A DNA stretch of 64,000 nt, taken from positions 162,699 through 226,698 of the IMG/VR virus record IMGVR_UViG_3300025098_000012; one strand, written 5' to 3'. Both the position numbers and the translations under genes were made by a program. Below are positions 1-58,519 of this stretch, in pieces (the stretch's first letter is position 1; each line of letters opens with the position of its first letter). The notes beneath the pieces were generated by a model. That model had not been told where the DNA came from, searched no databases, and saw only the letters and a list, made by a program, of their open reading frames with translations.

Positions 1-80
1 TCTGGAACATAATTTGGAGTTGGGCAAGTATGGAGTCCCTGCGAGTCCGAAAATATCTGTTCCATTAACTTCTGATCCAT
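1..80 (-). CDS. Partial hypothetical protein running off the window (MDQKLMEQIFSDSQG...)
   Basis: ATG at 80-78, open to the window edge, with the late-type motif at 102-114 upstream; not in the ORF track. Confidence 0.45.
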   Translation of the reverse strand, partial: MDQKLMEQIFSDSQGLHTCPTPNYVP

Positions 81-84
81 TTTT

Positions 85-603
85 TTAAGCCCCTTCTACG
101 GATAAACAATCTATAGTGTGTATGATTTCTACACTCCTAAAAGACAGGTGGATAGCGTACATTCGTACATCGCCATCTCTCCAAGTCATCACTACCTCTC
201 CCTCAAAGCTCTTAAAAGGACCAGATTTTAATCGAACATAGTCTCCTTGTTTGAAAGAACCCCCTAGATTATCCACTTGCTTGACCATTCTCTTCAAATC
301 AGAGTCGGGGATCACTCCCATACTCATAAGGCCAGTGCGAGAATCTAGTTGAGAGATGATGTCTCTTACTAACCCACATTGCTTTAAACTATAATACTCA
401 ACAGCACCATACCCACTCTTGATGAAGATATACCCTTCCATTAACCAAATAGGTTCATGGTATCTCTGAACCATCAAAGGTATGTATACATCATCAACAT
501 TAAAAGCAGTGTTGGAAACAATTCTATCTTTGAGCGACCCTTTTAGGGCTTCTTCTTCGCCTTTAGTTGAAAGCTCAAGGACAACCCACGAAGTTTCTCT
601 CAT
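85..603 (-). CDS. nusG: NusG/RfaH-like transcription elongation/antitermination factor
   Basis: N-terminal W-VL...GYIFIK NGN-like segment; C-terminal KOW motif FKQGDYVRLKSGPFKSFEGEV. Confidence 0.8.
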   Translation of the reverse strand: MRETSWVVLELSTKGEEEALKGSLKDRIVSNTAFNVDDVYIPLMVQRYHEPIWLMEGYIFIKSGYGAVEYYSLKQCGLVRDIISQLDSRTGLMSMGVIPDSDLKRMVKQVDNLGGSFKQGDYVRLKSGPFKSFEGEVVMTWRDGDVRMYAIHLSFRSVEIIHTIDCLSVEGA

Positions 604-630
604 AGATAACTCACAGTAAAAAGAATGGTG

Positions 631-1824
631 TTAAATAGATACCATTCCTTTTACCATCTTGCTAAAATCCGATAGCGAAAGTTGTTTCTTAGGCGGTACT
701 TTATCCACCTGTGGTTCTGAAACAGCGATTTTTTCTTCAGAAATTGCTTGATGCACTTGTAGGGTTTGTACACCGCCGATCTTCCACTTCAACAAATCAC
801 ACTTGAACATACCACCTGTCGGTCTAATCGGACGACTCGCTAAACTGTCTGCAAGACTTAATAAAGGCATACCATACTTATCCCAAATCTCTTGCAAAAG
901 AGGTCTGTTCCAATATGGGGGTGGCACACCTGCCTTCATACCTAGAGAAATAGCAAACATACACGCAGATTGCAACCTGTCATAAGCAATACCCACAGGA
1001 GTCGATTGCAATAACTCATCGACCAAGCTCAAAGACTTAGAGTTGTCACTCAACAAGAGCTGACAGATAACATCATTACGATCTACATGGAGATATGCCC
1101 TCACACCTAGTAGACCCACCACACCCTCATTCGAGGAAGCTACACCCTCAATCGCTTTTAAAGCATCTCGAATATGACCCTCTGTGAAGTCAGCTATTAA
1201 AACCAACGCTTCACGCTCATACTCGAAGCCTTCCCACTCACACACCTTTTGTAAGCGATCTGCTATTTCTTCTGAGTCCACATGGCGAATGATGAACGCA
1301 GGAGCACACCTACTCAACACAGTCTGTCTCATCTTCTCTGGTTCGGTAGTGGCAAATATACAGACGAGCTTCTTATCGAAGCTACCCCGATCATTCTCCT
1401 CCATCGGCTTCAATAGAGCATCGAGTGCATCCTTAGATAACTGATGGGCCTCATCAAAGAGGTAGAGCTTCTTCTTCCCCGAAAATGAAGAATACCCTAG
1501 TTCCTCTAAGAGCTTCTTCACATCTGCTTTACCACTATTCGTAGCCGCATCTACCTCAATGAATGAGTCATGGCTACCTATTAACATCGCTTTACATGAA
1601 TGACATTCATCACAAGGCTCTCCATTAACAGGAGAGCCACACAATAAAGCACGAGCCATGATCCGACCTAGAGTGGTCTTGCCCGAACCATAAGGACCAG
1701 CGAATAGATAAGACTGTCTCCAACCTGCGTCTGACTTGACAAAGCCTTTGAGCGTTTGGATGGTAGCCTTTTGACCAAGCACATCGCTGTATGTTCTCGG
1801 TCTGTATTTGGTGTCTAAGGACAT
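631..1824 (-). CDS. dnaX: DNA polymerase III gamma/tau clamp-loader ATPase
   Basis: KYRPRTYSDVLGQ, Walker A GPYGSGKTT, Zn motif C...EPCDECHSC, EVDAATNSG, DEAHQLS, SRC motif. Confidence 0.93.
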   Translation of the reverse strand: MSLDTKYRPRTYSDVLGQKATIQTLKGFVKSDAGWRQSYLFAGPYGSGKTTLGRIMARALLCGSPVNGEPCDECHSCKAMLIGSHDSFIEVDAATNSGKADVKKLLEELGYSSFSGKKKLYLFDEAHQLSKDALDALLKPMEENDRGSFDKKLVCIFATTEPEKMRQTVLSRCAPAFIIRHVDSEEIADRLQKVCEWEGFEYEREALVLIADFTEGHIRDALKAIEGVASSNEGVVGLLGVRAYLHVDRNDVICQLLLSDNSKSLSLVDELLQSTPVGIAYDRLQSACMFAISLGMKAGVPPPYWNRPLLQEIWDKYGMPLLSLADSLASRPIRPTGGMFKCDLLKWKIGGVQTLQVHQAISEEKIAVSEPQVDKVPPKKQLSLSDFSKMVKGMVSI

Positions 1825-1899
1825 CTTCTCTCCTCTCGTATAGGTACATATACCTTTATACTATTTCGAGAAGATTTAAGACCCTTAGAAGGGATAAGA

Positions 1900-2379
1900 T
1901 TAAATAACCTCTATCATCCAACCACGACCTAGACCGCCACCAAAAGATCCACGAGATGTCTGTAAGTAATCTTTGATAGCATACGCTATATCAACATCAC
2001 CCTCAAAGCGATCTTCCAAGTCATGAATACCTGCGTTCATATATATATCATCCATCTCAACGGGATGGCTTGCTTCTACTGCTAATGCAAAGTCAAAAAG
2101 ACTCACATTGCAAGACCAATGGTTATCTGGACAGATAAAGTTGATCTTTGATCTTTCTCCATTAGGGATGATGTTTACAACACATCGACCTGTTGCTTGG
2201 CTTTTGACCATTGAAAGTAGCTCTTGGACTGTCATCCTCTCCACTTCGTTTCTTGGTGATCCTGTAGAGATTGACACCTTGATCTTCGAGCTTGCTGTAC
2301 GATTTGAAGCTGTTTTGGACTCAAGTCGAGCAATCCTTTGCTCAAGGTCTTTGATGATTTCACTAGCAGATCTTCTCAT
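1900..2379 (-). CDS. MRRSASE-leader cassette protein (putative virion-internal cargo)
   Basis: ATG at 2379 after GGAG RBS; leader MRRSASEIIKDLEQRIARLESKTASNRTAS; unrelated C-terminal payload. Confidence 0.8.
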   Translation of the reverse strand: MRRSASEIIKDLEQRIARLESKTASNRTASSKIKVSISTGSPRNEVERMTVQELLSMVKSQATGRCVVNIIPNGERSKINFICPDNHWSCNVSLFDFALAVEASHPVEMDDIYMNAGIHDLEDRFEGDVDIAYAIKDYLQTSRGSFGGGLGRGWMIEVI

Positions 2380-2439
2380 GGTTTTTCTCCATTGGTTTAA
2401 GGTTAAAGAGATCACTTATGAGAGGGTATAAATAAACTA
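2358..2439 (-). repeat. 82-bp promoter-UTR-leader cassette, exact inverted copy of 56387-56468
   Basis: Base-by-base identity between the two loci; diverged copies at 5077-5165, 25199-25241, 42979-43036, 50040-50140 and, coding part only, 52613-52669 and 22925-22979. Confidence 0.95.
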
Positions 2440-2440
2440 C
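2427..2440 (-). promoter_or_regulatory. Putative late-promoter motif (sense RTAGTTTATTTAT-like), representative copy
   Basis: Minus-sense copies at 102, 2427, 4620, 5151, 8214, 11852, 15233, 24196, 25228, 26141, 33528, 36237, 39801, 43024, 48806, 49611, 50127, 53623; plus-sense copies at 18111, 54438, 56385, 58476; nearly always oriented toward a downstream start. Confidence 0.75.
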
Positions 2441-2485
2441 AAATAAAGTACCATTAGCATGATGTTGTTTCCTCATCTGTCTCTA

Positions 2486-2758
2486 TTACCCGATCAGACT
2501 CTTGAAGATGCTTTTGTCGAGAGGCTTCATGGTGATCTCACCATTCTTCATAGTGGCTGATTGTGCATCAAGTACCCAAGCACCCTTCTCAGAAGGTACG
2601 ATTTGGATTTGATACTGCACCCCGTCCTCGTAGTTCATCTTCTCCTCAGAGAAAGAGGGAAGTGGAGTACAGAAGAGAGTCGGTGAGTTCCCATGTGGCA
2701 GAGCATTTACTGCCTCTTTTAGATCATTAAGAGTAGGGATGATAGTTGGTTGTAGCAT
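2486..2758 (-). CDS. Hypothetical protein
   Basis: AGGAG RBS; GTAACCCCTTAT motif upstream at 2815-2830. Confidence 0.7.
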   Translation of the reverse strand: MLQPTIIPTLNDLKEAVNALPHGNSPTLFCTPLPSFSEEKMNYEDGVQYQIQIVPSEKGAWVLDAQSATMKNGEITMKPLDKSIFKSLIG

Positions 2759-2814
2759 ATTTTCTCCTTATTGAGAGTGGAAGTTGGTGGGCTTCATTGC
2801 CCCGATACTATGAT

Positions 2815-2830
2815 ATAGATAAGGGGTTAC
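2815..2830 (-). promoter_or_regulatory. Putative early/middle promoter motif GTAACCCCTTATYYAT, representative copy
   Basis: Seven copies: 2815-2830(-), 15261-15276(+), 15608-15623(+), 39102-39117(-), 39822-39837(+), 58173-58188(-), 58456-58471(-), all intergenic and oriented toward a downstream unit. Confidence 0.75.
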
Positions 2831-2881
2831 ACACCACATTCTCGGTATCATTCATATAAAGGGAATGGGAGACAAGACACC

Positions 2882-4003
2882 ATGCAAGTTAAAATAGAAA
2901 ACTACCAATCAATCAAACACGCTGAGTTTGAGGTCAAAGGTCTGACTGTCATTACAGGACCGAATAACACAGGCAAGTCTGCTTGTGCGAGAGCCATTGC
3001 AGGTGCTTTCTCTAACGCTAGGGGTTATTCTCATGTTCGCAAAGGTGAAAAGTCATCAAAAGTCTCCATCGACTTTGATGATGGCAACTCGGTCATTTGG
3101 GAAAAGGGAAAAGGGGTCAACAAATATGAGATCAACGGACAAAAGCTAGATAAGGTTGGATCAAAGACTCCCGATGAACTTGATGACTTAAACATTATTT
3201 CAGTAGATGTAGATGGAAAAACTGTCTGGCCTCAGATAGCTAGACAGTTTGAACAAATCTTCTTGCTTGATATGCCCCCTAGTGTCCTCTCTAGTGCCTT
3301 GTCTGATGTCAAGACGATAGAAGCCTTAGAGAAAGCCTCAAGTTTCTCTAGGAGCGAAACTAAGAGCCTTAATCAACGCATTAAGATTAAGCATGAGGAC
3401 TTAGAGTATGAGCGTAAACGATTACCTAAGTTCAATGAACTGTCAGACGCAGAAAAAGCAATCAATCATATAAATGATCTTGAGGGGTCGATTAAGACCC
3501 TTGAAGAAAGAGTTAAAAAGCTAGAGGCAATCAAAGAAAAGAGAGAAAACCTTATGTTTCAAACACAGTTCGTATCTGCCTTGCAAAATGTACACTTTCC
3601 ACAGGTCAACCCACATGACTTCATGGGGATCAAAGACCTTGAGCGTATCCGTAGAGAAAAGAACCGACTAAGGATCATGGAAGGTATCGTAGGTGTCGGC
3701 TTAACATCATTCCCATCTTTGCCCGATGTGGAGGTCAAAGACCATAGACCACTTGAGCGAGTCTTGAATAAGCGTAAAGAGCTTGACCAAACAATCAAGT
3801 CAATCTCTATGCTAGAGGTCGAACTACCAAAAGTAGATACCACTATCGAGAATGACCTCAAAATCGCTTCGGAACGCTTTGAACTGTTCAGTCGCATCTC
3901 TCGCACCGAACGAGAGGTAGAAAAGCTCACAGAGGAGCTTGACGCTATCAAATGCGAGATTGGTGATACTTGTCCTTTATGTGAACAAGGTATCGACCAC
4001 TAA
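2882..4003 (+). CDS. SbcC/Rad50-like ATPase, N-terminal half ending at the zinc hook
   Basis: IENYQSIKH, Walker A GPNNTGKS, Q-loop region, coiled coil, terminal CPLC; no signature or Walker B motif. Confidence 0.8.
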   Translation: MQVKIENYQSIKHAEFEVKGLTVITGPNNTGKSACARAIAGAFSNARGYSHVRKGEKSSKVSIDFDDGNSVIWEKGKGVNKYEINGQKLDKVGSKTPDELDDLNIISVDVDGKTVWPQIARQFEQIFLLDMPPSVLSSALSDVKTIEALEKASSFSRSETKSLNQRIKIKHEDLEYERKRLPKFNELSDAEKAINHINDLEGSIKTLEERVKKLEAIKEKRENLMFQTQFVSALQNVHFPQVNPHDFMGIKDLERIRREKNRLRIMEGIVGVGLTSFPSLPDVEVKDHRPLERVLNKRKELDQTIKSISMLEVELPKVDTTIENDLKIASERFELFSRISRTEREVEKLTEELDAIKCEIGDTCPLCEQGIDH

Positions 4004-4057
4004 CTCACTTTGTCTCTTCTTTAATCACTTTGAGGACTGAGATTTCTAGCGAGTATA

Positions 4058-4588: not shown

Positions 4589-4636
4589 GGTGTCTCTCCT
4601 TTATGGATAAAAGACACCGATAAAGAGACTATTAAT

Positions 4637-4688
4637 CCCTAGATACGAAAAACCCCCCCCAAAATCTCAAAGGGAGATGAGGTTCTTT
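4637..4688 (-). terminator. Rho-independent terminator, variant copy of the capsid terminator
   Basis: AAAGAACCTCATCT...GAGAT...GGGGTTTTT.GTATCTAGGG, homologous to 6501-6547. Confidence 0.65.
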
Positions 4689-4695
4689 ATAGACC

Positions 4696-5103: not shown

Positions 5104-5170
5104 GTTTTTTCTCCATTGGTTTTTGGTTAATGAGATCACCTATGTGAAGATATAAATAAACTATTGAAAT

Positions 5171-5196
5171 CCCTAGATACAAAAAAACCCCATCTC
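5171..5196. repeat. 26-bp direct repeat (half terminator) identical to 6501-6526
   Basis: CCCTAGATACAAAAAAACCCCATCTC at both sites, flanking the LAGLIDADG gene and a membrane gene. Confidence 0.9.
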
Positions 5197-7484: not shown

Positions 7485-7506
7485 AATAAATCACTCTTCC
7501 TTTCTA

Positions 7507-8100: not shown

Positions 8101-8245
8101 GAGATTTCTCCTATTTAGCTCGTACTCTCTGTTTTCAAGAGAGTAGTGTTGTGTTGAAATAGGGTGGTCTTACAACCAACCCCGAAAAGGTTTTCCAATA
8201 TAATAGCGTCAGATATAAATAAACTATTACAAGTTTATCTATATC

Positions 8246-11295: not shown

Positions 11296-14200
11296 TTACC
11301 CCTTAACGATGTCGGAAGGTTTGATGATAAAGAGGCAGGTATAACAAGCGAGCAGTTTCTCACTCTTACCTCCTCTTCTTTTGTAAACAGTATTGCCGAG
11401 TGGAGTTTTACACTTGGGACAACAAGGTTTTTCCTCATTCCGACATTGGCGATAAGTACGATCTTTCTTATACCAATAAATAGCTTGCTTCATGTATCTG
11501 GAGGCAACACGATTAGCTTGCTTTTTGACGGCACGAGAAGTTACAGGAACAGTACCAGCTCCACCTGGTATAGTATCTTGATCGTCAGTATAAATGTTCA
11601 AGTAATCACCCGAAGTATCTACAACAAGATCTTCTACAGGATAGCGTTGCGATCCATGAGGGAACTGCACATCGACCATACCAATTGCAGGGAAGATAGC
11701 TATAACGAGTCCAGACCTTGACGGATTACCACCAAGAAAGGGGTATACACGCATCCCTAGCTCGAACGCTTGGGATCTACGCTGATAGTCAACATATTGT
11801 GTAGATCGTTTTTGCATGATTACAGTGCCTCCACTCTTATAGTAGGTGTCAATAAATGATCTATTAAAATTATTTGCTTGTTTATTTGATGAGGTAGACT
11901 CAATTTCTTGTGTCGCTGTGTCATCAAATAGCTCAGTAAGCCTACTTCTTATGTCTTTGAGCCTCTGTCTCTTAGTCGCACCATCTAAACTTTTCACTTT
12001 TTCTAGTTCTTGCTGTATCTGCTCCCATCTAAACTTTTTCGTGTTATCACTGTAGAGCTGAATACCGTCAATGCTACTCCGAGTTTCTTCAATTCTCCAT
12101 CTTGTCCTAAATTCTTCTCCAGCGGCTTCTCTCTCTTCTTCGGTGTATTCTTTACCAGTTGATAGATCAACACCATCAACGAACACCTCGAAAAACTTAT
12201 CTTTGTTTTCTCTCCAAAAGAGCTTCATTTGCTCTTTGACTTTCTTAGAAGGACCAGAGCTATCACCTTTAGGTTTGTAGTAGCCATCCCCCTTAGACTC
12301 TTTTTCGACAGTATGGAGATTAACGAAACCTCCACTCATGTAATCCCTTAACAGTTTCTTCATGTCATCAGACAATGGGTTAGGACAGGGATCATCTGAG
12401 GGGAGGAGCTTCTTGTCTCCCACACCTGCGGCGTTATTTGTAGGCCCACCAGGACAGTAGTCGTCATCTAATAAATCCAACATATCTCCATAAGGTCCTT
12501 GCTCACCTCCAACTACAGCTTTAAAATCTTCTGTGTCGAGGTTTTCAGTGACCGACTCAATCAAATCTCGTGTCTTACTAGGGTTAGTGCCTTGTTGGGA
12601 GAGCATACTGATGCCTTCTTCCCAAGCCTCTGATCCTGTTTGTCTTGCGAGTTCAAGTAATCGGTCGGGTACTTCGGCATACCCATCAATGACACCCTCA
12701 CTATTTATCATGCGTATTGTATTGAGGGCTGTTTCAGATGCTTTTAAGTTTACGAGCTTACCCTGTAATGATTTCTTTTCTTCATCAGACAGACCTTCCC
12801 CATCATTTTCTAGGAGTGCTTTTGCTTCACCAATCTCCTCTGCGACCCTTCCAACCATAGCATTACGCTGTTCTTCATTCATCTTCTTAAAGCGTCTGCC
12901 TTGAACTCTGCGTACATTCTGTAGGTGCTTCTCTTTATCGTGATCATCCCCATCAGTAGGGAACTCAAGTAGCCCGAACTCTGGATCTTCCACAATACTC
13001 TTTTGTGCATGGGTTGTTGCTAAGTAGCTACCTAGATTTTGTGCGTACTCCTTTTGAACAGCCTCATAGTTTTCTAAGTCTGATTTTAAGGAACTGAGAG
13101 AATCTTCTGCATCTTTCAAAGAATTCTTAAGTTGCTTTAGAGTTTCCTCATCTGTGTCATCGTCAGCTTCCGATAACTTTTGTTGAGCTTTATTCACCTT
13201 GTCGGTGGTTTCCTTAATGTCCTTATTGAGTTGTTCTACTGTAGGAGGAGGTGTGGGGGGCTTTAAATCCTTTGCCTCTTCGTCAATGTAAGACTGTAGA
13301 CCATCGAGTCCTTGATTTCTCATCACTTCTTCGACTTTGAATGCACCGGATCCGTAAGCCTGCACCATTTGTTGAACTTGATCTTCGGTCAACTCATCAA
13401 GTGCATCTACAGTTTCACTTATCCTTTGAATAAATGTGCGAGTGCTCTTTCTAGTTGATGCAAGATCCTTCTTCTCAAGTCCTTTGATTTGTTCCTTGAG
13501 ATCACGCTTCTCTTTATCGCTTAAAGAAGGATCTTCGAGCTTTTTTTCGAGATTCTCTATCTTCTCACTCGTGCCTTTGCTTAACTTATCCCTAAAGGCT
13601 TTCTCAAGGCGATCCTTGATTTCTGCCTTTTGGACATAGCTCGGCTGTTCCAATAAAGGAGCACCTTCAACAAACGGAGGTTCTTCTTTCGGAGGTGTAT
13701 CATCCCCCTTTGCGTCATCCTTTCCCGATTCATTTCTAGGTTTTGGCTCACCCTTACCTTTGCTTTTACCCTTGCCTTTGGGTTCTTCTTCTCCTGTTTG
13801 CTTCTCACGCTCTTTAGCTCTCTCGTCCAAGACATCTTTGGTTTCTTTTACTTCTTCTTCAGTAATGTCGGATGCCTCTTGAACATCAACCTCGACAGCA
13901 TCAATCCCCTCTTCTTCAAGAGATGTGGTGAGCTTTTCAGCGACTCTCTTTTTATAAGGACCTCGCTTTTTGCCTTTATCGGATCTTGTTTTTCTTTTCT
14001 TCTTAGGTGGTGGTTCACCTACTTCTTCCCGAACCTCCTCATGGATGTCCATAAGAAGAGCCATAATGTCTCTCATGGTGCGTTCTTCAACAAGAGACAT
14101 ATCTCTCATATCACGACCATTGTTCATCCTTGAGAGCAGGTCATATTGTTCATCATTGAGAGTAGCGGCTACGGAATAGCTGACATCACTAGAGTCTCCC

Positions 14201-15189: not shown

Positions 15190-15319
15190 AACTACACCTC
15201 TTTTTTTTGGGATACTAACTACAAGTAGGAAATATAAACAAACTATTAAACTAAGAGAGCGTAACCCCTTATTTATATCTCTATGTAAGAACCACCAAAC
15301 ACTCTTAAAGGAGAACAAC

Positions 15320-18097: not shown

Positions 18098-18145
18098 TAG
18101 ATACCTCCTTGTAGTTCATTTATAATACCACTAAAGAAAAGGAGA

Positions 18146-20575: not shown

Positions 20576-21241
20576 ATGAAGATTTTGATTGTAAGCACAA
20601 CCACGCATAGGGATAAATCAACTAGCAAAATGGTGCTAAGTAAACTGTCAGATAAACTAAATGAAAAGCATGATATAGACTTCATTGATGCAAATGATCT
20701 TCACATCGTTCCTAATCTTAGTTGTTATTCTGATGGGAAAATGAACTGTGCTAATCCAGACGCAGGTAAATATAGATGTTGGGCACATAAACTTAGTCAT
20801 GACAACCCCGATGATTATCGGGGGAAAGATGAGATGAACATCATTTATGACGCTTTAGATTGGTGCGACTTGGTAATATGGGGAACGAGTGTTCGTTGGG
20901 GTAGTCATTCAGCCTTGATGCAGAAGATCATAGAGCGTATGAATACCCTTGAAAACCAACAAACAGTATATGGAGAGAAGAACCCTTTAGAGGGTAAGAA
21001 ATGTGGTGTTGTGGTAACTGGACAGCATTATAAGGCACAATCGGTATCTGAACACCTCATCACACAGTTCGGGTGGATTGGTTTTGATACAGACCCCTCT
21101 TATGTTTTGACTTGGCAGAAATCCCAAGACATACACCTAGAGCAAGAAGATGATAACAACGACCCTCTTGAAGCATATCTCAAATCTAAAGAGGGCAAGG
21201 CACAAGTAGATAACTTCCTTTCATTCATGGAGATCAAATGA
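20576..21241 (+). CDS. Flavodoxin-fold NAD(P)H-dependent FMN reductase / iron-sulfur flavoprotein
   Basis: IVSTTTHR...STS, CYSDG..NC...[39 protein letters not shown]. Confidence 0.75.
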
Positions 21242-24156: not shown

Positions 24157-24223
24157 CTGTTTATTCCTTATATGCCTAATCATATAAGTATAGTGATAAA
24201 TAAACTATTGAAAGGTTAAATCT

Positions 24224-25198: not shown

Positions 25199-25239
25199 GA
25201 TTAAAGAGATCACTTATGAGGGGGGGTGTAAATAAACTA

Positions 25240-26097
25240 TTAATAGCGATCTTTATCAATAGCGTCTTGGTCAATCTCAACAAAGATACCGTACTCTACC
25301 TCAGCCAAAACATGAGCGATGATATGTCTATCGTCCTTAATCTCTAAACCTCTGACCATGTAGTCATGCTCAAGGATCTCAATGTGAGTGAGGTTGTGAT
25401 ACTCTGGTATATCGTATTCGACCTCATGCTGTACATCACCAAAAGCGAGATTAAGCTGATCGTCATCCATATTCCTAAGAATGTTGCCCTTGATGTTCTT
25501 GGTGATAGCATCACAAAGATTTCTTACTGAACTCGGATCATCATCGAGGTACATATCAGCAAGGTTCATATCAGCAAGGTTCTCAAGCTCGTCTAGCTCA
25601 ACCTCAATAGCCATCTTAACAAGAAGACCTGTAGTACCCTCAATAGAATCATTTTCGGGGTAATTTGGACTGCTTGGGTGAAGCGAAGAAGGAACTTCCA
25701 CCTCGATCTCGCCCTTAACTTTTTTGAGTTCCATTTTGAGTACATCACCATCTACTATTAAAGAAGAGAGAGCGTGTAAAAACTTGTTTGCTTCCTTTTT
25801 GCTTGTGCCTGGAAGCAATGTTTGAACTGCTTGTAGTCCTGTACCTGCGAGTTTATTTCGTGCAGTACGACTAGTAATCCTGTCTGCATCCCGATCAGAG
25901 AGATACATATCTGCATCCCGATCATAATACTTTCCCTCACTAGGGTCATAATAAAGGATCTCCCCTCCTTTAAACTGAAATGGACCTTCCATTCCCTTTA
26001 ATGGGGTGTAGCGATCTTGGTCAAGGCGAGGCATACGGAACTTTCCCATCATTTCTTCGTGGTGTCTTTTAGCTGACGCTTTTCTAATTGAAGCCAT
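25240..26097 (-). CDS. Two-module late protein
   Basis: EGPFQFKGGEILYYDPSEGKYYDRDADMYL module, then RTARNKLAG boundary and an acidic module; late motif at 26141. Confidence 0.7.
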   Translation of the reverse strand: MASIRKASAKRHHEEMMGKFRMPRLDQDRYTPLKGMEGPFQFKGGEILYYDPSEGKYYDRDADMYLSDRDADRITSRTARNKLAGTGLQAVQTLLPGTSKKEANKFLHALSSLIVDGDVLKMELKKVKGEIEVEVPSSLHPSSPNYPENDSIEGTTGLLVKMAIEVELDELENLADMNLADMYLDDDPSSVRNLCDAITKNIKGNILRNMDDDQLNLAFGDVQHEVEYDIPEYHNLTHIEILEHDYMVRGLEIKDDRHIIAHVLAEVEYGIFVEIDQDAIDKDRY

Positions 26098-26172
26098 AAT
26101 ACACTTCCTTTCTAATTTTCCTGTTCATAACTTGGTATCAATAAATAAACTATTAAAGAAAGGACTTTGAAA

Positions 26173-33487: not shown

Positions 33488-33542
33488 GTCTGTTCTCCTC
33501 AAAGGTAATATACAGAAGTATCTCATAATAAAGGATCTACAA

Positions 33543-34424
33543 ATGTTAATTATACTTTCCCCGACATCACAGTTAGCTACTGACACTCTTAGGCTGTCAA
33601 ATCCTCCTGCACTATCGGTAGAAGCAGAATATGGTGGGTTCGTCCTTGAGGGTACAAAATACACTGCCGCTCATCACCAACCACTCGGATCACCTTATGT
33701 CGGTCGCCATGTCACCCCCTTTGGTAGACCTGCACCTTGTAATGACTCCAATATACCAAAGCTCAATGATAATGAAGTAGCCATCATCTCACACCTCGAC
33801 ATCGACACTCTTGGTGGACTTATGAGAGCTACAGATCAGTTCGAGGATAACCCTGTCTTTTGGTTCTATGCTGAACATATCGACACCAATGGCATCCACA
33901 AGGCAAGACAAGACCACCCCTGTTGGGTTCTATATAATGGACTTAACGCATGGATCAATGAAAACTATCCAGAGATAGACACAAAGAGAAACAACGATGT
34001 GACCGATTTCTGCTACAAAGCATTCGACTTCATTAAAGAAATGCTTAATGACGGTCTGCTTGCTACTCGAATGGGTAATGCTCACATCTATCTCCAAGAA
34101 AAGCTCGATGAGTCCTCCTTTGTAGAGATGAAACCATGTGGTCTGATCGTTAGACGAACAAGAGGTGAAAAGGTAAATCATCTCTATCGTGGAGAAAATG
34201 CGATCATCACTTACGATGAAAAATATAAGAAGATTAGGATTTCTACTGCTGACCCCATTCCAAACCTATCTTGTAGACGACTCGTTCAAGAATGGTGGGG
34301 TGATAGAGCTGGTGGACACGATCAGATCGCAGGTTCTGCAAGAGGCCAAATCATGTCCGAAGATCAGTTTAGGGAGGCAATAGAAAGGTTTGAAACTGAA
34401 CTAACTAGAGCATTACAAAGGTAA
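33543..34424 (+). CDS. DHH-like phosphoesterase
   Basis: SHLDIDTLGG and C-terminal GGHDQIAGS; AAGGA RBS before ATG 33543. Confidence 0.5.
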   Translation: MLIILSPTSQLATDTLRLSNPPALSVEAEYGGFVLEGTKYTAAHHQPLGSPYVGRHVTPFGRPAPCNDSNIPKLNDNEVAIISHLDIDTLGGLMRATDQFEDNPVFWFYAEHIDTNGIHKARQDHPCWVLYNGLNAWINENYPEIDTKRNNDVTDFCYKAFDFIKEMLNDGLLATRMGNAHIYLQEKLDESSFVEMKPCGLIVRRTRGEKVNHLYRGENAIITYDEKYKKIRISTADPIPNLSCRRLVQEWWGDRAGGHDQIAGSARGQIMSEDQFREAIERFETELTRALQR

Positions 34425-36190: not shown

Positions 36191-36257
36191 AACATTTCTC
36201 CTTGTGTGCCGTGTTAAATCAACACCCATGAGGAGTTATAAAGAAACTACAAAAGCA

Positions 36258-38414: not shown

Positions 38415-38480
38415 GTTCTTAACCTCTCGTTATAGAGTTGAATGTTATTGATACCACCCTACAATGAGAGAATATAAAAA

Positions 38481-39077
38481 CTACAAATCACCCATCTTCT
38501 CTTTGAGAACCTTCTTATACTCCGACCATGATCTCCTAAAGGTTCGCATGAAGCCCTCAAGATCATCGTAGAGGCTAGATGGATTGAGTACACCTGTGAG
38601 CTTCGGCAAGTTCCAACCCCCACTGAAGATGTTATCAAGAAACTCCTGTGCATCTTTATGCCCTGTATGCTCTCGCTCATCGTTGAAGTTGATCAAATAC
38701 TCGACTACATCTTCACCGTAGCTAAACTCTATGTCGATCTGTAAGCGATCTTCATCACAGAGCATCACCCCACAAAAGTCACACTCTTCCTCGACTGTTT
38801 CCTCGACTCTAAAGCCAAGCTCATGCAAGAGCTTAAGAAACGCTCCGATAGCGTAAAAGGTGTTTTGGTTTTCAAGCACCTCGTCTGAGACACCACGAAC
38901 ACCATTACGCTTCTCGGTCATCCGTTGCTCTATGAGATTTTGTCGAGCGTTTTCCTCGATAGCACACTCAAACATAAGTCCGTATGTGCGAAATGTGTCT
39001 TCAACACCTTTAAGTGCAGTGTCAGTTTCAAGAAAGTCTGCGAAGATGAACTTCTCGTCATCATGGATCTCATTCAT
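38481..39077 (-). CDS. Hypothetical protein
   Basis: AGGAGG RBS; GTAACCCCTTAT motif at 39102. Confidence 0.7.
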   Translation of the reverse strand: MNEIHDDEKFIFADFLETDTALKGVEDTFRTYGLMFECAIEENARQNLIEQRMTEKRNGVRGVSDEVLENQNTFYAIGAFLKLLHELGFRVEETVEEECDFCGVMLCDEDRLQIDIEFSYGEDVVEYLINFNDEREHTGHKDAQEFLDNIFSGGWNLPKLTGVLNPSSLYDDLEGFMRTFRRSWSEYKKVLKEKMGDL

Positions 39078-39753: not shown

Positions 39754-39898
39754 GTTAAACTCCTTTTAGAGATTGGTTAAACGCATATAAACTAGAGTCA
39801 TATAAACAATCTACAAATCCTGTAACCCCTTATCTATGAGATTGTGTGGGAGAGGTATGTAAGCCTTGCCCAAGCCTTACTCCAACAAGGAGATCCAA

Positions 39899-42878: not shown

Positions 42879-43035
42879 GACAAAGTAATCTTCTCTTTGG
42901 CTGTAACCAAGATAACACTCTTGAGTCCAGTTTATCTCAAGATCGTTATTAAAATTGAGATCAGATTTTTAAAGAAATCATATCCATTTGGTTTAAGGTT
43001 AATGTGATCACTTATGTGGGTTCATAAAGAAACTA

Positions 43036-44799
43036 TCAGCCTTGACAGCTCATACATTCATCAAGATCATAATCTTTTAATGCCTTACGCTCAATCTTCT
43101 CACTCACTTTATCGGCTACAACACCAGCGTTGGTGCGAAGATAGTACAAGCCCTTGAGCTTCTTCTTCCATGCACTCAAATGAACAGCGTTGACATAGTT
43201 CTTATCTGAACCAGCAGGGAAGAATAAGTTGACCGACTGACCTTGGCAAACCCACTCTTGACGAACGGAAGCGTGTTCCACAATCCACATTTGGTCGATC
43301 TCAAAAGCAGTCTTGAATGTGTCCTTTTCAATCTGAGTTAAGAAATCTAAGTGCTGTACGCTCCCTTGATTGAGGATGATACTCTGACGCACTTCATCGA
43401 GATCAATGTCCTCTTTCTTCTCAAGCACAGCTTCAAGATACTTATTGAACTGCAAAAACGACCCTGCTCGTGTCCTATGCGTAAACGCATTTGACTTCCA
43501 AGGTTCGATACTTGGGCTTGTATCGAGAATGATAGCCGAGTTAGCGTTTGGGGCGATGGCGAGAAGATGGCTATTCCTCATGCCCGATCCGATACCGTCA
43601 AGGTACTCACCCTTGATTTCTGCTAAACGCTTAGAGGAAGCTACTGCTCGTTCTTTGATGGTTGAGTAAATCTTACGGTTAGCCGAGACAGCAAAGATCG
43701 ACTCAAAGGGCAGACCCTTTTTTTGAAGATAGGCATGAAAACCCATTGTACCTAAACCAAGAGAGCGTTCGGCTTCTGCACTCTTGATCGCCTTCTCAAG
43801 TTGAGGGGGAGCGTTTTCAATGAAATACTGTAGGACATCATCTAAGAACTCGATCAAGTCCTCAACGATGGGGGTATCTTTCCATTCATCGAACATTTCA
43901 ACATTGAGACTAGATAGACAACAGACTGCCGAGCGATTAGGACCTGTGGGAAGATGAATTTCATTACAGAGATTTGAGCCATGTATCTCCAACCCCTTAT
44001 CCTTGAGGGGCTGTGGGAGATGTCTATTGGCTTCATCAATAAAGTTGAGGTAAGGCTCTCCTGTACGGAAGCGTACTTCAAGGATGCGTTGCCATAGTTC
44101 ACGAGCATCTACGGTGTCTCTGACTGTATTATCGGCAGGGTCAATGAGATTCCAAGTTCCACCGCTCATCACAGCAGTCATAAACTCATCAGTAATGTTA
44201 AGGGCATTGTTAAGGTTGAAACACTTACGGTTAGTGTCTCCACCTGTAGGAAGTCGAAGGTTCATAAACTCAACGACATCGGGGTGGCTAATGTCGAGGT
44301 AAGCCGCATAACTACCTTTGCGTGTAGACCCTTGCCTATACGCAACCATATCCGAGTCTACGGTTTTGAGAAAAGGAATAGGTCCTGGTGCTTTTTTGCT
44401 AACTGAGCGAACATCATCCCAATGTCCACCGACACCCCCTCCCATAACGCTCATCCACCGAAGCTCCTCTGTGTGTTCGATCAGACCCTCAACTGTGTCG
44501 GGTACATAAGTGAGGAAGCAAGAAATCGGCATACCTGTACTCTCAGCGTTCGAGAGTATAGGTGAACTGAACATGAACCAACCTTTGGTTGCGTACTCTA
44601 ACACCCTCTCAGCAAGTTCTTTATTTGGGGTGTATGCGTAAGCGGCTCTCCTAAATGCTTCCTGTGGTGATCCGTCCGACTCTTTCATGTAATAAGAGTT
44701 CAATAGTGTCAATGCGTGGTCTGAAAAAGGGAATCCCATGCCTTTTCCTTTCATTTTTTCAATCGGTTTTTTCTCATAGTTGCACTTGAGTTCTCTCAA
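43036..44799 (-). CDS. nrdA: Ribonucleotide reductase class Ia alpha subunit
   Basis: PISCFL, GGGVG, GSNLCNEI, VCCLSSLN, APNANS, QGQSVN, LYYLR, C-terminal CMSCQG. Confidence 0.93.
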   Translation of the reverse strand: MRELKCNYEKKPIEKMKGKGMGFPFSDHALTLLNSYYMKESDGSPQEAFRRAAYAYTPNKELAERVLEYATKGWFMFSSPILSNAESTGMPISCFLTYVPDTVEGLIEHTEELRWMSVMGGGVGGHWDDVRSVSKKAPGPIPFLKTVDSDMVAYRQGSTRKGSYAAYLDISHPDVVEFMNLRLPTGGDTNRKCFNLNNALNITDEFMTAVMSGGTWNLIDPADNTVRDTVDARELWQRILEVRFRTGEPYLNFIDEANRHLPQPLKDKGLEIHGSNLCNEIHLPTGPNRSAVCCLSSLNVEMFDEWKDTPIVEDLIEFLDDVLQYFIENAPPQLEKAIKSAEAERSLGLGTMGFHAYLQKKGLPFESIFAVSANRKIYSTIKERAVASSKRLAEIKGEYLDGIGSGMRNSHLLAIAPNANSAIILDTSPSIEPWKSNAFTHRTRAGSFLQFNKYLEAVLEKKEDIDLDEVRQSIILNQGSVQHLDFLTQIEKDTFKTAFEIDQMWIVEHASVRQEWVCQGQSVNLFFPAGSDKNYVNAVHLSAWKKKLKGLYYLRTNAGVVADKVSEKIERKALKDYDLDECMSCQG

Positions 44800-48677: not shown

Positions 48678-48817
48678 GTAGACAAGGGGCTGAGTCTTTC
48701 TGCATAGGGCAGAAAATACGAACGATACCACCGCATTTATAACAGGAATGAGGAGACATACTAAGAGCCTTTGAGCGAGGGTTGAGAGGGTATTCTTTGA
48801 TACCCATAAAAATACTA

Positions 48818-48979
48818 TTAAACAACCCTTACCAAAGAGACTCGATAAAGAAGGTTAAAGAGATCTCCTTTGTGCCTCTTTCTTTTATTTGTCTCTTCGA
48901 TTTCTATTCGGACAGGTTTAGCCGAGTCCTCGCTACAGCAAAGAGTACAGCATATCACTAATATAAAGGTCAGTCTCAT
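48818..48979 (-). CDS. Small secreted/lipoprotein-like protein (53 aa)
   Basis: AGGAGG RBS; MRLTFILVICCTLCCSEDS...; not in the track. Confidence 0.55.
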   Translation of the reverse strand: MRLTFILVICCTLCCSEDSAKPVRIEIEETNKRKRHKGDLFNLLYRVSLVRVV

Positions 48980-49566: not shown

Positions 49567-49657
49567 AATCAGTCTCCTAGTGTGAATAAAGTGTCTGATT
49601 ATGTGGGCGATATAAAGAAACTATTAAAGTAGATCTCTACCTGTGGATCATAAACGA

Positions 49658-50107: not shown

Positions 50108-50788
50108 TCACTTATTGATAGGGGGGATAAATAAACTATTAACACGCTCGTACTTGATGACCTCATCAACCAAACCAAGCTCAAGACACTTCTTAGGGTT
50201 CATCCAAAGATCACGCTTTAGAAGATCTTTGAGTTGCTTCTTCTTCATGTTGGTGTTCTTGAGGTAAATGGACTCCAACATTTCCATGAGCGAGTCCATA
50301 GACTCTTTCTCATCAGTTAGGTTCTCGTATGTTCCCCATACACCTGTGCTGATTTGGTGGATGAGCATGAAACTATGCTCGGTGATGAAGCGTTTAGTTC
50401 CGACACAAGACATGATAGTCGCCGCTGACGCCGCCGACCCCTCGACATAAGTGAAAACAGGGATGTCCGAGTCTAAGATATGGCTCGCCCCTGCAAGACC
50501 ACTAAAGGCACATCCTCCACCACTATTGATATGAAGGTGGATCGCAGGAGCTTGAGAGAGTCCAAGATCAGTGACCATATTAATGATCTGTTGACCGATG
50601 GACTTGATCGCAATCCCCATCTCCATGACAGACTTCGGAGAGATGCCTTGATAGAGGTAGATGTGATTGTCGCTTACGGTAATCTCACCATAGAAATCTG
50701 CTTGTGCGTTTTTGCGTTGAACATGAGCTTCTTCGTCATCATAAATTCTACGCATAGTGGGTGGGTGGTTAAAGTATTTCATAATCAT
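50108..50788 (-). CDS. clpP: ClpP-like (S14) serine protease
   Basis: LHINSGGG, VEGSAASAATII, FMLIHQ, RDLWMNPKKCLELGLVDEV. Confidence 0.8.
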   Translation of the reverse strand: MIMKYFNHPPTMRRIYDDEEAHVQRKNAQADFYGEITVSDNHIYLYQGISPKSVMEMGIAIKSIGQQIINMVTDLGLSQAPAIHLHINSGGGCAFSGLAGASHILDSDIPVFTYVEGSAASAATIMSCVGTKRFITEHSFMLIHQISTGVWGTYENLTDEKESMDSLMEMLESIYLKNTNMKKKQLKDLLKRDLWMNPKKCLELGLVDEVIKYERVNSLFIPPINK

Positions 50789-53584: not shown

Positions 53585-53649
53585 CACATCTCCTTCGGTT
53601 TGTTTCACAGCAAAGGAGGAGGTATAAATAAACTATAAAAGGTAAAGAT

Positions 53650-54165: not shown

Positions 54166-54442
54166 CGAGTTGATCGCTAAGTGGAAGTCATTATTCACAG
54201 ATGAATATGGGGATTCGACACTGACATATCTTGAAGTGCCTGATTCTTGGTATTTATTAGTCGATACACTATGTGATCAAATCCAAAGCCACCTAGTAAA
54301 AACACCCGAAGCTGGTTTCTTTTATGTAGTTCAGATTAAAGAGAAGTTTGGTGGTTTAAGGTTTTATACTAACAGTCATGACTCAACTATAGAGGGTCTG
54401 ATCCGAATGGCAGAAGCATATAGCTACCACATACCTCAATAG
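54155..54442 (+). CDS. Hypothetical phage protein (QIKEKFGGLRFY motif)
   Basis: GAGG RBS before MTHDEL; motif recurrent in phage proteins. Confidence 0.7.
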   Translation: MTHDELIAKWKSLFTDEYGDSTLTYLEVPDSWYLLVDTLCDQIQSHLVKTPEAGFFYVVQIKEKFGGLRFYTNSHDSTIEGLIRMAEAYSYHIPQ

Positions 54443-54483
54443 TTGTTTTATATCCTCAACTAACAACAAAGGGGGGTATAAAT

Positions 54484-54750: not shown

Positions 54751-56386
54751 ACCCCGATCAAAAGCGATCACTCGTAAGCTCAATCCTGCCGAGATGAAAT
54801 CGAGGGTCAAAGTGGCGATGACCACAGGAGGCTCTATGATGGGGTCGGGTGGGAACTTCTACTCACCAGAGTTATCTACTGACTTTCTTGAACTACCTCA
54901 AAGTCAAGACGAACAACGCAACTACTTTAGGTTCTTTTATCGCACTGACCCCTTCGTAGGACAGGCGATTGATCTACATACAGAGCTTCCCCTCTCTAAG
55001 ATCAGATTAGGGCTACCTAAAGCTCGCAACCGAGACATGGCTTATGAAGCACTTAGGTTCTGTGAAAAATGGGCGAAGCGAGTCGGACTACTTCACCGAC
55101 TCATAGAAATCTTACATGAGTTCAACCTGCTCGGTGAGGTTTTTGTTTTCTGTGAGGACAATAATCCAGATGTGCCTCAAGAGGTGACACATAGTGGTCG
55201 GAATGTTCTTAAAGAAGATGGCGAAGCGTTTACTGAGTGGACTGAGTATGAGGACTCCCATGAACGAGCTTACAAGTGGCTCAAGAGGAACTATAAAGGG
55301 TGGACAGGTGTTCGTATCCTCCCTCCCGAACAAGTTCACATGGAGAGTTTTCCTTTCACTAGTGAGAAGATCATTCAACTTATTCCCGATAGTAAAACTC
55401 GTGATGTAGTTGAACGAGCTTCGGTTAATGATCCCTCTGCTCTTCGTATTGTAGACTCAATGCCAGGAGATGTTGTAGAAGCTATTCGAGATGGTCGCAA
55501 CATTGACCTCAATACTGATCCCGATCAAGGATCATTCGTTTATTATATGGCTCGTAAGAAATCACAATATGAACCTCGTGGACACTCTATGCTTGAGCGT
55601 TGTCTTCGTATCCTCGTTTATCGAGATAAATTAAGACAAGCCCAAACTTCTATCGCTTCAAGACACATGACTCCTATCCGACTCGTATATGCAGAGGATA
55701 TGGATGCGTCTGATGTTGAAGAGTTGAGAGATCAAGTGGATCTTGCACTACAAGATCCAGACTATTCTATCATCGCTAACTTCCAAGTCTCTTGGGAAGA
55801 GATGGGTGCTGACTCTCGTTTGCTTGAACTATCGGGCGAATATGATATGACAGACCGACAGATGTATGCAGGTCTAGGTGTTACAGAATCTCTGTTATCT
55901 GGTGAGTCTAGTTATAGTGGCGATAGGATCAACTTAGAAGTCATCAACACACGCTATATGCTTATGCGTGAGGTTCTTCAAGAGATGGTTGAAGAGAACA
56001 TCTTGAAGCCAATGTGTAGACGAATGGGTTTCGTTGAAATAGATGAAGATGGTGATGAGGTTGTAGTACACCCAACCCTTAGCTTCACTCGACTTGGATT
56101 GCGTGATAATCAAGATACCTTTGACGCTCTCTTTAACCTGTATCAGAAGGGTTCATTGGACATTGATGTGATCCTAGAACTCCTCAATGTAGATCCTATG
56201 ACAACTAAGGCTAAACTTGAGCGTGATATGTGGACACTCAATGACTCTCAGTTTAACGAAGTTCTGAGAGGGGTCTATGGTGAAGCAGGTCGTATGTTAG
56301 CCGAGAACACAGAAGCGATTGAGATCATCGCTAAGAATCTTGGATTAAAGTACAACCCACCAGAAGATGACGGTGGTCGTTTCTAA
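54710..56386 (+). CDS. Portal protein
   Basis: 558 aa; FFYRTDPFVGQAIDLHTELPLS, EFNLLGEVF, GHSMLERC, QAQTSIA, GVTESLLSGE are typical of large-phage portals. Confidence 0.75.
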   Translation: MSEELEAKSVGKIKPRSKAITRKLNPAEMKSRVKVAMTTGGSMMGSGGNFYSPELSTDFLELPQSQDEQRNYFRFFYRTDPFVGQAIDLHTELPLSKIRLGLPKARNRDMAYEALRFCEKWAKRVGLLHRLIEILHEFNLLGEVFVFCEDNNPDVPQEVTHSGRNVLKEDGEAFTEWTEYEDSHERAYKWLKRNYKGWTGVRILPPEQVHMESFPFTSEKIIQLIPDSKTRDVVERASVNDPSALRIVDSMPGDVVEAIRDGRNIDLNTDPDQGSFVYYMARKKSQYEPRGHSMLERCLRILVYRDKLRQAQTSIASRHMTPIRLVYAEDMDASDVEELRDQVDLALQDPDYSIIANFQVSWEEMGADSRLLELSGEYDMTDRQMYAGLGVTESLLSGESSYSGDRINLEVINTRYMLMREVLQEMVEENILKPMCRRMGFVEIDEDGDEVVVHPTLSFTRLGLRDNQDTFDALFNLYQKGSLDIDVILELLNVDPMTTKAKLERDMWTLNDSQFNEVLRGVYGEAGRMLAENTEAIEIIAKNLGLKYNPPEDDGGRF

Positions 56387-56446
56387 TAGTTTATTTATAC
56401 CCTCTCATAAGTGATCTCTTTAACCTTAAACCAATGGAGAAAAACC

Positions 56447-58442: not shown

Positions 58443-58519
58443 ACGACATTATACAATAAATAAGGGGTTACAGTTGTAGTTTCTTTATCGCTCTCAATAT
58501 AAAGAAAAAGGAGCTTACT

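What the first reader, a model, noticed from the sequence alone, without database searches (positions are those of the whole stretch)
102..114. Novel late-promoter consensus, often overlapping upstream stop codons
Seen: about 22 copies of RTAG-W-Y-NN-TTTAT-like sequence upstream of head genes, portal, cassette genes and tagged enzymes. It frequently begins inside tandem stops (TAATAG, TGATAG at 25240, 43036, 48818, 54440, 56384). It does not match sigma70. Inference: it is recognised by a phage sigma factor or RNA polymerase encoded outside the window, and it defines the virion-cargo regulon.
Basis: partly seen in the sequence, partly recalled or inferred. Interest (0 to 1): 0.6.

Follow-up and report, generated by a model that had tools for sequence, protein, structure and literature searches.

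The report
Late promoter motif of marine huge phage
A 17-base sequence repeated in front of head, tail and virion-cargo genes of an uncultured marine giant phage is very probably a phage-specific late promoter; it is a new consensus of a familiar kind, probably read by the host RNA polymerase under phage-encoded sigma-like factors.

Summary
RTAGWYNNTTTAT occurs 20 times in the window against 0.42 expected, and 37 times in the 226.7-kb record. The full consensus is one 17-nt block, TTW-RTAGTTT-N-TTTAT-A, with no -35 element. About 80-90% of sites lie on the gene's strand, a median of 43 nt before a Shine-Dalgarno sequence and ATG (5% at random positions).

The motif recurs in three near-complete relatives (290-376 kb). 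It precedes the head-protease operon, portal, baseplate/tail genes and nearly all 'MRRSASE...'-tagged genes. DNA polymerase and the helicases lack it.

Two other compact motifs mark other gene sets: GTAACCCCTTATCTATA before many small genes, and TCATATAA before replication genes.

No phage RNA polymerase was found. Each near-complete relative has one divergent sigma-70-family gene, in a part missing from this record. A Sigma70_r4 protein gene starts at window position 80, next to a NusG-like gene at 85-603.

The index copy at 102-114 is the weakest and is not conserved.

The promoter reading is well supported by position and conservation. Late timing and the recognising factor are inferred, because no RNA data exist. 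This is a new member of a known kind.

The parts
101..117 (-). Index copy of the motif (score 15.7). Weakest site; lies inside the 3' end of the NusG-like gene, 21 nt before the ATG at position 80.
   Evidence: TTTAT half not conserved in relative G001
2427..2443 (-). Motif copy (24.7) before cassette leader and tagged gene 1900-2379.
4619..4635 (-). Motif copy (22.3) before the gene for a signal-peptide protein, 4058-4588. A terminator-like hairpin at 4676-4653 lies just upstream.
5151..5167 (-). Motif copy (23.3) before cassette leader and tagged gene 4696-5103.
8214..8230 (-). Motif copy (22.6), with a 113-nt leader before gene 7507-8100.
11851..11867 (-). Motif copy (20.6) inside the 1081-aa ORF, before an in-frame nested start at 11817 (173-aa product). 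It lies just upstream of the head-protease gene.
   Evidence: conserved in G001 and G003
15233..15249 (-). Motif copy (24.9) heading the minus-strand head block: 14548-15189, the 1081-aa ORF, head maturation protease 9853-11292, and the 522-aa ORF.
18108..18124 (+). Motif copy (21.2) before the topoisomerase IB-like gene 18152-19579.
20612..20628 (-). Weak variant (13.6) before gene 20217-20561.
24195..24211 (-). Motif copy (22.9) before gene 23608-24156, whose product has a basic N-terminus.
25227..25243 (-). Motif copy (18.9) overlapping the stop of gene 25240-26097. It is followed by a decayed cassette leader with no intact gene.
26140..26156 (-). Motif copy (24.1) before gene 25240-26097.
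33527..33543 (-). Motif copy (19.2) before the HAD-family gene 32894-33487.
36237..36253 (-). Motif copy (24.5) before gene 35465-36190.
38471..38487 (-). Weak variant (13.4) before the ribonucleotide reductase small-subunit gene 37440-38414.
39801..39817 (-). Motif copy (21.3) before gene 39199-39753. It sits back to back with a divergent GTAACCCC motif at 39822-39838 (+).
43023..43039 (-). Motif copy (18.4) overlapping the stop of the ribonucleotide reductase large subunit. It is followed by a decayed cassette leader.
48805..48821 (-). One-mismatch variant (13.9) with no convincing gene start behind it. Doubtful site.
49611..49627 (-). Motif copy (25.7) before gene 49036-49566.
50126..50142 (-). 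Motif copy (25.5) before cassette leader and tagged gene 49658-50074.
53623..53639 (-). Motif copy (25.8) before the WGR-domain gene 51854-53584.
54436..54452 (+). Motif copy (17.8) before a small ORF starting at 54484, followed by the portal gene 54710-56386.
56383..56399 (+). Motif copy (23.5) overlapping the portal stop codon, before cassette leader and tagged gene 56447-56740.
58473..58489 (+). Motif copy (20.8) before gene 58520-60382. It sits back to back with a divergent GTAACCCC motif at 58455-58471 (-). Both motifs are kept in close relatives while the leader diverges.
85..603 (-). NusG-like (NGN + KOW) transcription factor gene.
   Evidence: PHROG 'transcription antiterminator' E 7e-7; KOW 20.1 bits, just under the cut-off; solved NusG 2lq8 E 0.0036
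1..80 (-). First 26 codons of a 188-aa Sigma70 region-4 protein gene. The rest lies outside the window at genome 162212-162778.
   Evidence: PF04545 24.8 bits, over the cut-off of 24.1; Atlas viral region-4 clusters, score 0.96; adjacent to the NusG-like gene in all four genomes

Best explanation
The motif is a class-specific promoter of an uncultured marine huge phage (portal related to Bacillus phage G). It is a single 17-bp block, TTW-RTAGTTT-N-TTTAT-A, without a -35 element. It starts transcripts with leaders of about 30-50 nt in front of virion-structure genes, genes for N-terminally tagged proteins (probable capsid cargo) and some enzymes. This is a late-type regulon.

The most likely reader is the host core RNA polymerase, redirected by phage-encoded sigma-family proteins. 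The candidates are a 201-aa sigma2-sigma4 factor found in near-complete relatives but missing from this fragment, and possibly the 188-aa region-4 protein and the NusG-like protein encoded at the window's left edge.

Shown: enrichment, orientation, spacing, conservation, the gene sets, and the presence of the factor genes. Inferred: that transcription starts there, that it is late, and which factor reads it.
For: Enrichment:
- 20 exact matches against 0.42 expected in the window; 37 in the 226.7-kb record.

Position and orientation:
- 31 of 39 strong sites in this genome and 58 of 64 in the 376-kb relative have a Shine-Dalgarno sequence, ATG and ORF 15-75 nt downstream on the same strand. The median distance is 42-43 nt. 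Only 5% of random positions and 5-10 sites on the opposite strand meet this.

Conservation:
- In 24 orthologous pairs at 80-90% overall identity, most informative motif columns are 100% identical (the rest 88-92%), against 62% for the N column and 62-96% (mostly 79-92%) for flanking columns; by block, motif 93%, flanks 85-89%.
- The same motif at the same spacing occurs in relatives of 38% and 47% GC.
- Upstream of the 58520 gene the motif is kept while the leader diverges.

Gene sets:
- Present before the head-protease operon, portal, the baseplate-wedge module, a tail-lysozyme-like gene in G001, and 18 of 20 tagged genes in G001.
- Absent before DNA polymerase, DnaB and the helicases, several of which have TCATATAA instead.
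- De novo 8-mer enrichment recovers three separate motif classes.

Shape of the motif:
- The block is asymmetric, as expected for a polymerase or sigma site rather than a dimeric regulator.

Candidate factors:
- No T7-like polymerase or beta-prime domain in four genomes.
- One sigma-family gene per near-complete genome. 21 of 51 homologues hit Sigma70_r2. The family profile hits the solved sigma-H structure 3mzy at E 1.3e-11. An AlphaFold model (pLDDT 89) has sigma factors as nearly all of its top 40 Foldseek hits.
- A region-4 protein and a NusG-like pair are conserved in all four genomes.

Precedent:
- phiEco32 sigma gp36 reads a single element, tAATGTAtA, with starts 6-8 bp downstream (PMC8948821).
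Against: - There are no RNA data. All runs holding this phage are marine DNA metagenomes, so no transcription start is mapped and the timing is unknown.
- A sigma with a region-4 domain would normally also read a -35 element, and none is seen.
- There is one sigma2-bearing gene but three motif classes, so nothing ties it to this class.
- In a wider set of relatives, motif density does not track sigma identity. One relative with a 52%-identical sigma shows no copy in 42 kb.
- Foldseek E-values for the sigma model are only about 1e-2, with low TM-scores.
- Very divergent polymerases (N4-, crAss- or YonO-like) would escape the searches made.
- About a quarter of the copies come from one duplicated cassette.
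Confidence: 0.55

Rival explanations
1. The block is the binding site of a phage-encoded activator (or an antiterminator loading site) next to a weak promoter used by the host holoenzyme with its own primary sigma. The T-A-rich 3' half would serve as a poor -10.
For: A NusG-like factor, a region-4 HTH protein and a multi-HTH 144-aa protein are encoded. The three motif classes share a T(C/T)TATA-like 3' end, and the second and third motifs overlap at window 15608-15627. That could be a common weak -10 with class-specific upstream boxes, as in T4 middle promoters.
Against: The block has no dyad symmetry. Its 3' half, TTTATA, matches TATAAT poorly and lacks the conserved final T. Sigma-70-like promoters are depleted rather than enriched: 23 against 33.7 expected in window 1-20000, and 8 against 29.5 genome-wide in G001, the latter with mononucleotide shuffles only.
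Confidence: 0.15
2. The block is the promoter of an unrecognised phage-encoded RNA polymerase, perhaps virion-packaged or hidden in one of the giant ORFs. This would resemble the compact promoters of T7, N4 RNAPII, phiKZ or AR9 polymerases.
For: It is a compact, single-block, highly conserved promoter without a -35. Several giant ORFs of 1,000-3,000 aa have no annotation. Leader hairpins often begin right after the block, which would fit a start at its 3' end (weak evidence).
Against: There is no T7-like polymerase by Pfam or by phmmer with T7 gene 1. There is no beta-prime catalytic domain and no DFDGD-type motif in a plausible context. The capsid/portal lineage, related to phage G, is one in which no polymerase has been reported (PMC7824862). 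Sigma-family genes are present instead.
Confidence: 0.12
3. The block acts in RNA, not DNA. It would be an A/U-rich processing, stability or translational-control element in the 5' leader of polycistronic transcripts.
For: It lies at a fixed short distance before ribosome-binding sites. Leaders downstream are more structured than shuffles (mean z -1.67), and the Shine-Dalgarno sequence is 65% paired. Many copies lie between co-oriented genes, even overlapping stop codons.
Against: The same block also heads divergent gene pairs, where no upstream transcript on that strand is expected, and there it sits back to back with the other motif. A terminator-like hairpin directly precedes one copy. The sequence shows no conserved pairing partner. 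Spacing to the start codon varies from 27 to 60 nt.
Confidence: 0.08

Closest known systems
phiEco32 middle/late promoters read by phage sigma gp36 (PMC8948821)
   Same: A single conserved A/T-rich element without a -35, placed before middle/late genes. It is read by host core polymerase carrying a small, divergent, ECF-like phage sigma. The phage also encodes helper factors.
   Different: The sequence differs (tAATGTAtA, 9 nt, against a 17-nt TTW-RTAGTTT-N-TTTAT-A). gp36 lacks region-4 homology, whereas the sigma found here has a C-terminal HTH domain. phiEco32 is a 77-kb podovirus of E. coli, whereas this is a marine huge phage of over 300 kb. Recognition is untested here.
T4 late promoters (TATAAATA) with gp55, gp33 and the sliding clamp (PMC2988020)
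   Same: A compact -10-only late promoter before virion genes. Sigma function is divided between a small sigma2-like protein and a separate protein that takes the place of region 4. A clamp-loader gene lies next to the NusG-like and region-4 genes here.
   Different: The sequence differs. No gp55 or gp33 homologue was searched for specifically. The sigma here has both domains. Coupling to replication is unknown.
Compact promoters of phage-encoded RNA polymerases (T7 class, N4 RNAPII, phiKZ and AR9 non-virion polymerases; PMC7598289)
   Same: One short conserved block near the start site, several temporal classes each with its own block, and avoidance of host-type promoters.
   Different: No polymerase gene of any of these kinds was detected in four related genomes.

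Membership tests
Bacterial sigma-70 (-35/-10) promoter | A TTGACA-like element 16-18 bp upstream of a TATAAT-like hexamer | tested here: not met
   There is no information content upstream of the block to -20. Only one of the window's sites coincides with a sigma-70-like match, and such matches are below chance (23 against 33.7).
Single-element promoter of a phage-encoded sigma (phiEco32 type) | One conserved element, no -35, located before middle/late genes | tested here: met
Single-element promoter of a phage-encoded sigma (phiEco32 type) | The phage encodes a sigma-70-family factor | tested here: inconclusive
   This 226.7-kb record (73% complete) has no sigma2-bearing gene, but it has a region-4 protein. 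Near-complete relatives G001-G003 each have one sigma2-sigma4 gene.
Single-element promoter of a phage-encoded sigma (phiEco32 type) | Transcription starts 6-8 bp downstream and depends on that sigma | not testable with these tools
   No RNA run holds the phage, and there is no biochemistry.
T4-type late promoter | TATAAATA at -10 | tested here: not met
   The consensus is TTW-RTAGTTT-N-TTTAT-A.
T4-type late promoter | gp55 and gp33 homologues, and a sliding clamp as activator | not tested
   Only a clamp-loader homologue was seen (window 631-1824). No gp55 or gp33 query was run.
T7-like single-subunit polymerase promoter | A T7-like RNA polymerase gene in the genome | tested here: not met
   PF00940 gave no match in 4 genomes, but that search had no positive control. 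phmmer with T7 gene 1 against all ORFs gave a best E of 0.64.
phiKZ/AR9-type multisubunit phage polymerase promoter | Split beta/beta-prime-like genes | tested here: not met
   PF00623 found nothing in 4 genomes while 14 of 14 controls matched. No DFDGD-type motif was found in a plausible protein. Sensitivity for very divergent forms is limited.

The most novel reading that the evidence does not exclude
The phage runs its whole programme on three non-host promoter classes that share a T(C/T)TATA-like core. They differ in an 11-nt upstream block: none, GTAACCCCTTA, or TTARTAGTTTN. These are read by a modular, split sigma system, made of one sigma2-sigma4 factor plus separate region-4 proteins and a NusG-like factor that swap specificity. 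Host-type promoters are purged from the genome except in front of the sigma gene itself.
Probability: 0.15. Interest if true: 0.7.

Novelty: new member of a known kind. Interest (0 to 1): 0.42.

Why it matters
Huge phages of the phage-G lineage are almost all uncultured, and the jumbo-phage survey read here reports that this group encodes neither polymerase nor sigma (PMC7824862). A clean, conserved promoter code has three uses.

- It gives a way to sort hundreds of unannotated genes into expression classes from sequence alone. Here it marks likely virion and capsid-cargo genes.
- It points to the transcription factors to test.
- It offers portable promoter/factor pairs.

It also shows that this clade does encode sigma-family proteins.

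Tried and rejected
- Nucleotide search of the phage collection found nothing.
- The 485-kb relative LR745208.1 (portal 71% identical, 54% GC locally) has no copy of the motif. High-GC relatives have none either. The motif is therefore limited to the lower-GC part of the clade.
- I tried to correlate motif density with sigma identity over 72 sigma-bearing loci. There is no clean relation, so co-variation could not tie the sigma to this motif.
- The first fold of the sigma, from 5 sequences, was poor (pLDDT 57). A 51-sequence alignment was needed.
- I asked whether leader hairpins start right after the block, which would place the start site. Half do, but TCATATAA leaders cut the same way give 44%. 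The test does not discriminate.
- The frame shared by this motif and the GTAACCCC motif scores only slightly better than other offsets (3.92 against 3.24). It is suggestive only.
- A literature search for the motif strings gave only irrelevant hits.
- Read laying was not used, because all holders are DNA contigs.
- PF00940 matched in no control genome, so that negative alone is weak.

Full report
**Setting**

The window is the last 64 kb of a 226,698-bp IMG/VR virus record. The record is linear, 73% complete by CheckV and 43% GC. Runs that hold it are marine and seawater DNA metagenomes, and none is RNA. The portal gene (window 54710-56386) is 71% identical to that of the uncultured 485-kb phage LR745208.1. 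It is distantly related to the portals of Tunturiibacter phage Tunturi_5 and Bacillus phage G.

IMG/VR holds many relatives. Three complete or near-complete ones were fetched whole:
- G001: 375,691 bp, 80-90% nucleotide identity to this record.
- G002: 290 kb.
- G003: 312 kb, with terminal repeats.

Compared with G001, this record lacks about 130 kb (G001 107-236 kb), and the segment 186.8-222 kb is inverted.

**The observation**

RTAGWYNNTTTAT has 20 exact matches in the window against 0.42 expected, and 37 in the record. Aligning the sites gives one 17-nt block, TTW-RTAGTTT-N-TTTAT-(A/C). There is no information further upstream, so there is no -35 element.

A weight matrix finds about 48 sites in the record and 72 in G001. 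Of strong sites, 31 of 39 here and 58 of 64 in G001 have a Shine-Dalgarno sequence, an ATG and an ORF 15-75 nt downstream on the same strand. The median distance is 42-43 nt and the interquartile range about 35-47. The same test succeeds at 5% of random positions and at few sites on the opposite strand.

It follows from the TAA-TAG inside the consensus and from tight gene packing.

About ten of the copies in this record belong to one duplicated cassette: the motif, a conserved leader and a gene starting MRRSASEIIRNLE-RIARLE. Two window copies (25227 and 43023) are followed by decayed cassettes. Roughly 29 sites are independent of the cassette.

The index copy at 102-114 is the poorest and is not conserved in G001.

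**Conservation**

In 24 orthologous site pairs between this record and G001, most informative motif columns are 100% identical and the remainder 88-92%. The N column is 62% and the flanking columns run 62-96%, mostly 79-92%; taken as blocks the motif is 93% identical and the flanks 85-89%. Upstream of gene 58520 the motif is kept in five close relatives while the leader behind it diverges. G002 (47% GC) and G003 (38% GC) carry the same block at the same distance from starts, with 19 and 34 sites at score 13 or more. High-GC relatives and LR745208.1 lack it.

**Which genes carry it**

Genes with the motif:
- The head block headed by the copy at 15233, which includes the head maturation protease.
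- The portal operon.
- The baseplate-wedge/tail module at genome 3.6-18.5 kb.
- A tail-lysozyme-like gene in G001.
- 7-8 of 10 tagged genes here and 18 of 20 in G001.
- Untagged enzymes: topoisomerase IB-like, WGR-domain, HAD, glutamine-synthetase-like and a 2181-aa SNF2-like protein.

DNA polymerase, DnaB and the helicases lack it.

De novo 8-mer enrichment in upstream regions returns three separate signals:
- This motif.
- GTAACCCCTTAT(C/T)TATA, with about 42 copies here and 65 in G001. It is concentrated in a region of many small genes at 82-108 kb. Where the two motifs are adjacent they sit back to back on opposite strands.
- TCATATAA, which lies before DNA polymerase and several helicase and recombination genes.

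This is the pattern of a temporal programme with class-specific promoters. By gene content the finding's motif is the late class. That timing is an inference.

**What reads it**

No T7-like polymerase and no beta-prime domain were found in any of the four genomes.

Each near-complete genome has exactly one member of a sigma-like family. Alone it is below Pfam thresholds. The family evidence is stronger:
- The family has 636 representatives at E of 1e-3 or better.
- 21 of 51 aligned members hit Sigma70_r2, and others hit Sigma70_ECF and Sigma70_r4_2.
- Its profile hits the solved sigma-H structure 3mzy at E 1.3e-11 across both domains.
- The AlphaFold model from the 51-sequence alignment (pLDDT 89) finds sigma factors in nearly all of its top 40 Foldseek rows. 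Probabilities are mostly 0.5-0.99 (0.85-0.99 among the top 23 rows). E-values are near 1e-2 and TM-scores are low, as expected for two mobile domains.

This gene is absent from the present record because it lies in the missing 130 kb. A contig from the same sample as a 97%-portal relative carries it.

In G001, G002 and G003 the gene is preceded by TTGAC(A/T), a 16-nt spacer and an A/T-rich hexamer. Sigma-70-like sites are otherwise scarce: 8 against 29.5 in G001, using mononucleotide shuffles only. That would suit a cascade started by the host holoenzyme.

At the window's left edge sit two further transcription genes:
- A NusG-like gene at 85-603.
- Five bases after its stop, a 188-aa protein gene whose residues 40-87 pass the Pfam Sigma70_r4 threshold. 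It falls in viral region-4 clusters of the ESM Atlas.

The pair is adjacent in all four genomes.

**Mechanism proposed**

The host core polymerase carries a phage sigma-family factor, recognises the 17-bp block and initiates at or shortly after its 3' end.

One reading places TAGTTT as a -10-like hexamer, keeping the T, A and final T that matter most for sigma-70-family recognition. TTW would be an extended -10 and TTTAT a conserved discriminator, with the start at the following A or C. This reading is my inference and is untested.

Leaders behind the motif are more structured than shuffles (mean z -1.67, n = 112) and pair the Shine-Dalgarno sequence 65% of the time. This hints at an added translational or stability layer. 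It does not fix the start site.

**Comparison with known systems**

The nearest analogue in behaviour is the single-element promoter tAATGTAtA of phiEco32 sigma gp36 (PMC8948821). T4 late promoters and the compact promoters of phage polymerases are more distant analogues. The membership tests show that the motif is neither a sigma-70 promoter nor a T4, T7 or phiKZ type.

A survey of jumbo phages states that the group containing phage G lacks both polymerase and sigma (PMC7824862). This clade does have sigma-family genes.

**Verdict**

The promoter reading is well supported by position, orientation, conservation and gene content. The late timing and the identity of the factor remain inferred. 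This is a new consensus of a known kind of element, of moderate interest. Its main value is as an annotation key and an entry point into transcription in uncultured huge phages.

Noticed in passing
window 2814-2830(-), 15261-15277(+), 15608-15624(+), 39101-39117(-), 39822-39838(+), 58172-58188(-), 58455-58471(-); genome 82-108 kb: A second promoter-like motif, GTAACCCCTTAT(C/T)TATA. It has about 42 copies in the record and 65 in G001. It lies before many small genes, and sits back to back with the finding's motif at divergent gene pairs.
   Followed up: partly
window 2852, 15620, 17856, 24180, 29481, 39798, 46410, 47446 and others; genome 25142 before DNA polymerase: A third compact motif, TCATATAA, with 37 copies. 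It lies 27-50 nt before the starts of DNA polymerase, helicase and recombination genes, and overlaps the second motif at window 15608-15627.
   Followed up: partly
window 1900-2379(-), 4696-5103(-), 49658-50074(-), 56447-56740(+); decayed copies after 25227 and 43023: A family of small genes shares the N-terminal tag MRRSASEIIRNLE-RIARLE and a conserved 5' leader. The genes spread as a cassette together with the promoter. An internal copy of the tag sits inside the WGR-domain protein, near window 52669.
   Followed up: partly
window 85-603(-) and 1-80(-), continuing to genome 162212: A NusG-like gene is followed directly by a gene for a 188-aa Sigma70 region-4 protein, downstream of a clamp-loader gene (631-1824). 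The pair is conserved in all four genomes.
   Followed up: partly
window 11296-14541(-), nested start at 11817: A 1081-aa ORF upstream of the head protease has an internal copy of the motif, a Shine-Dalgarno sequence and an in-frame ATG, giving a 173-aa C-terminal product. This is conserved in G001 and G003 and resembles nested scaffold genes.
   Followed up: partly
window 26167-27366(+): An adenylosuccinate-synthetase-like gene matches the PHROG family annotated as the PurZ type (E 1e-86). It is a possible hint of 2-aminoadenine DNA. It was not distinguished from ordinary PurA.
   Followed up: no
G001 218836(-), G002 and G003 equivalents (L066, L063, L065): The sigma gene of the relatives is one of very few genes with a canonical TTGACA, 16-nt spacer and -10-like promoter. 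Sigma-70-like sites are depleted genome-wide (8 against 29.5 in mononucleotide shuffles).
   Followed up: partly
genome 186.8-222 kb (window 24.2-59.6 kb) against G001 107-73 kb: This segment is inverted relative to the 376-kb relative. It could be a real rearrangement or an assembly join. The record also lacks about 130 kb that G001 has.
   Followed up: no
leaders after motif copies, e.g. window 4588-4618(-), genome 133440-133478(-): Many late leaders form a hairpin whose 5' arm (C/T-rich, G-poor) pairs with the Shine-Dalgarno sequence. Mean z is -1.67 over 112 leaders from four genomes.
   Followed up: partly
window 36258-37394(-): A homing-endonuclease-like gene lies next to the ribonucleotide reductase small-subunit gene (37440-38414).
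   Followed up: no
genome 139626-140648(-), L008:13626-14648: A glutamine-synthetase-like gene (Gln-synt_N and Gln-synt_C domains) is driven by the late motif.
   Followed up: no
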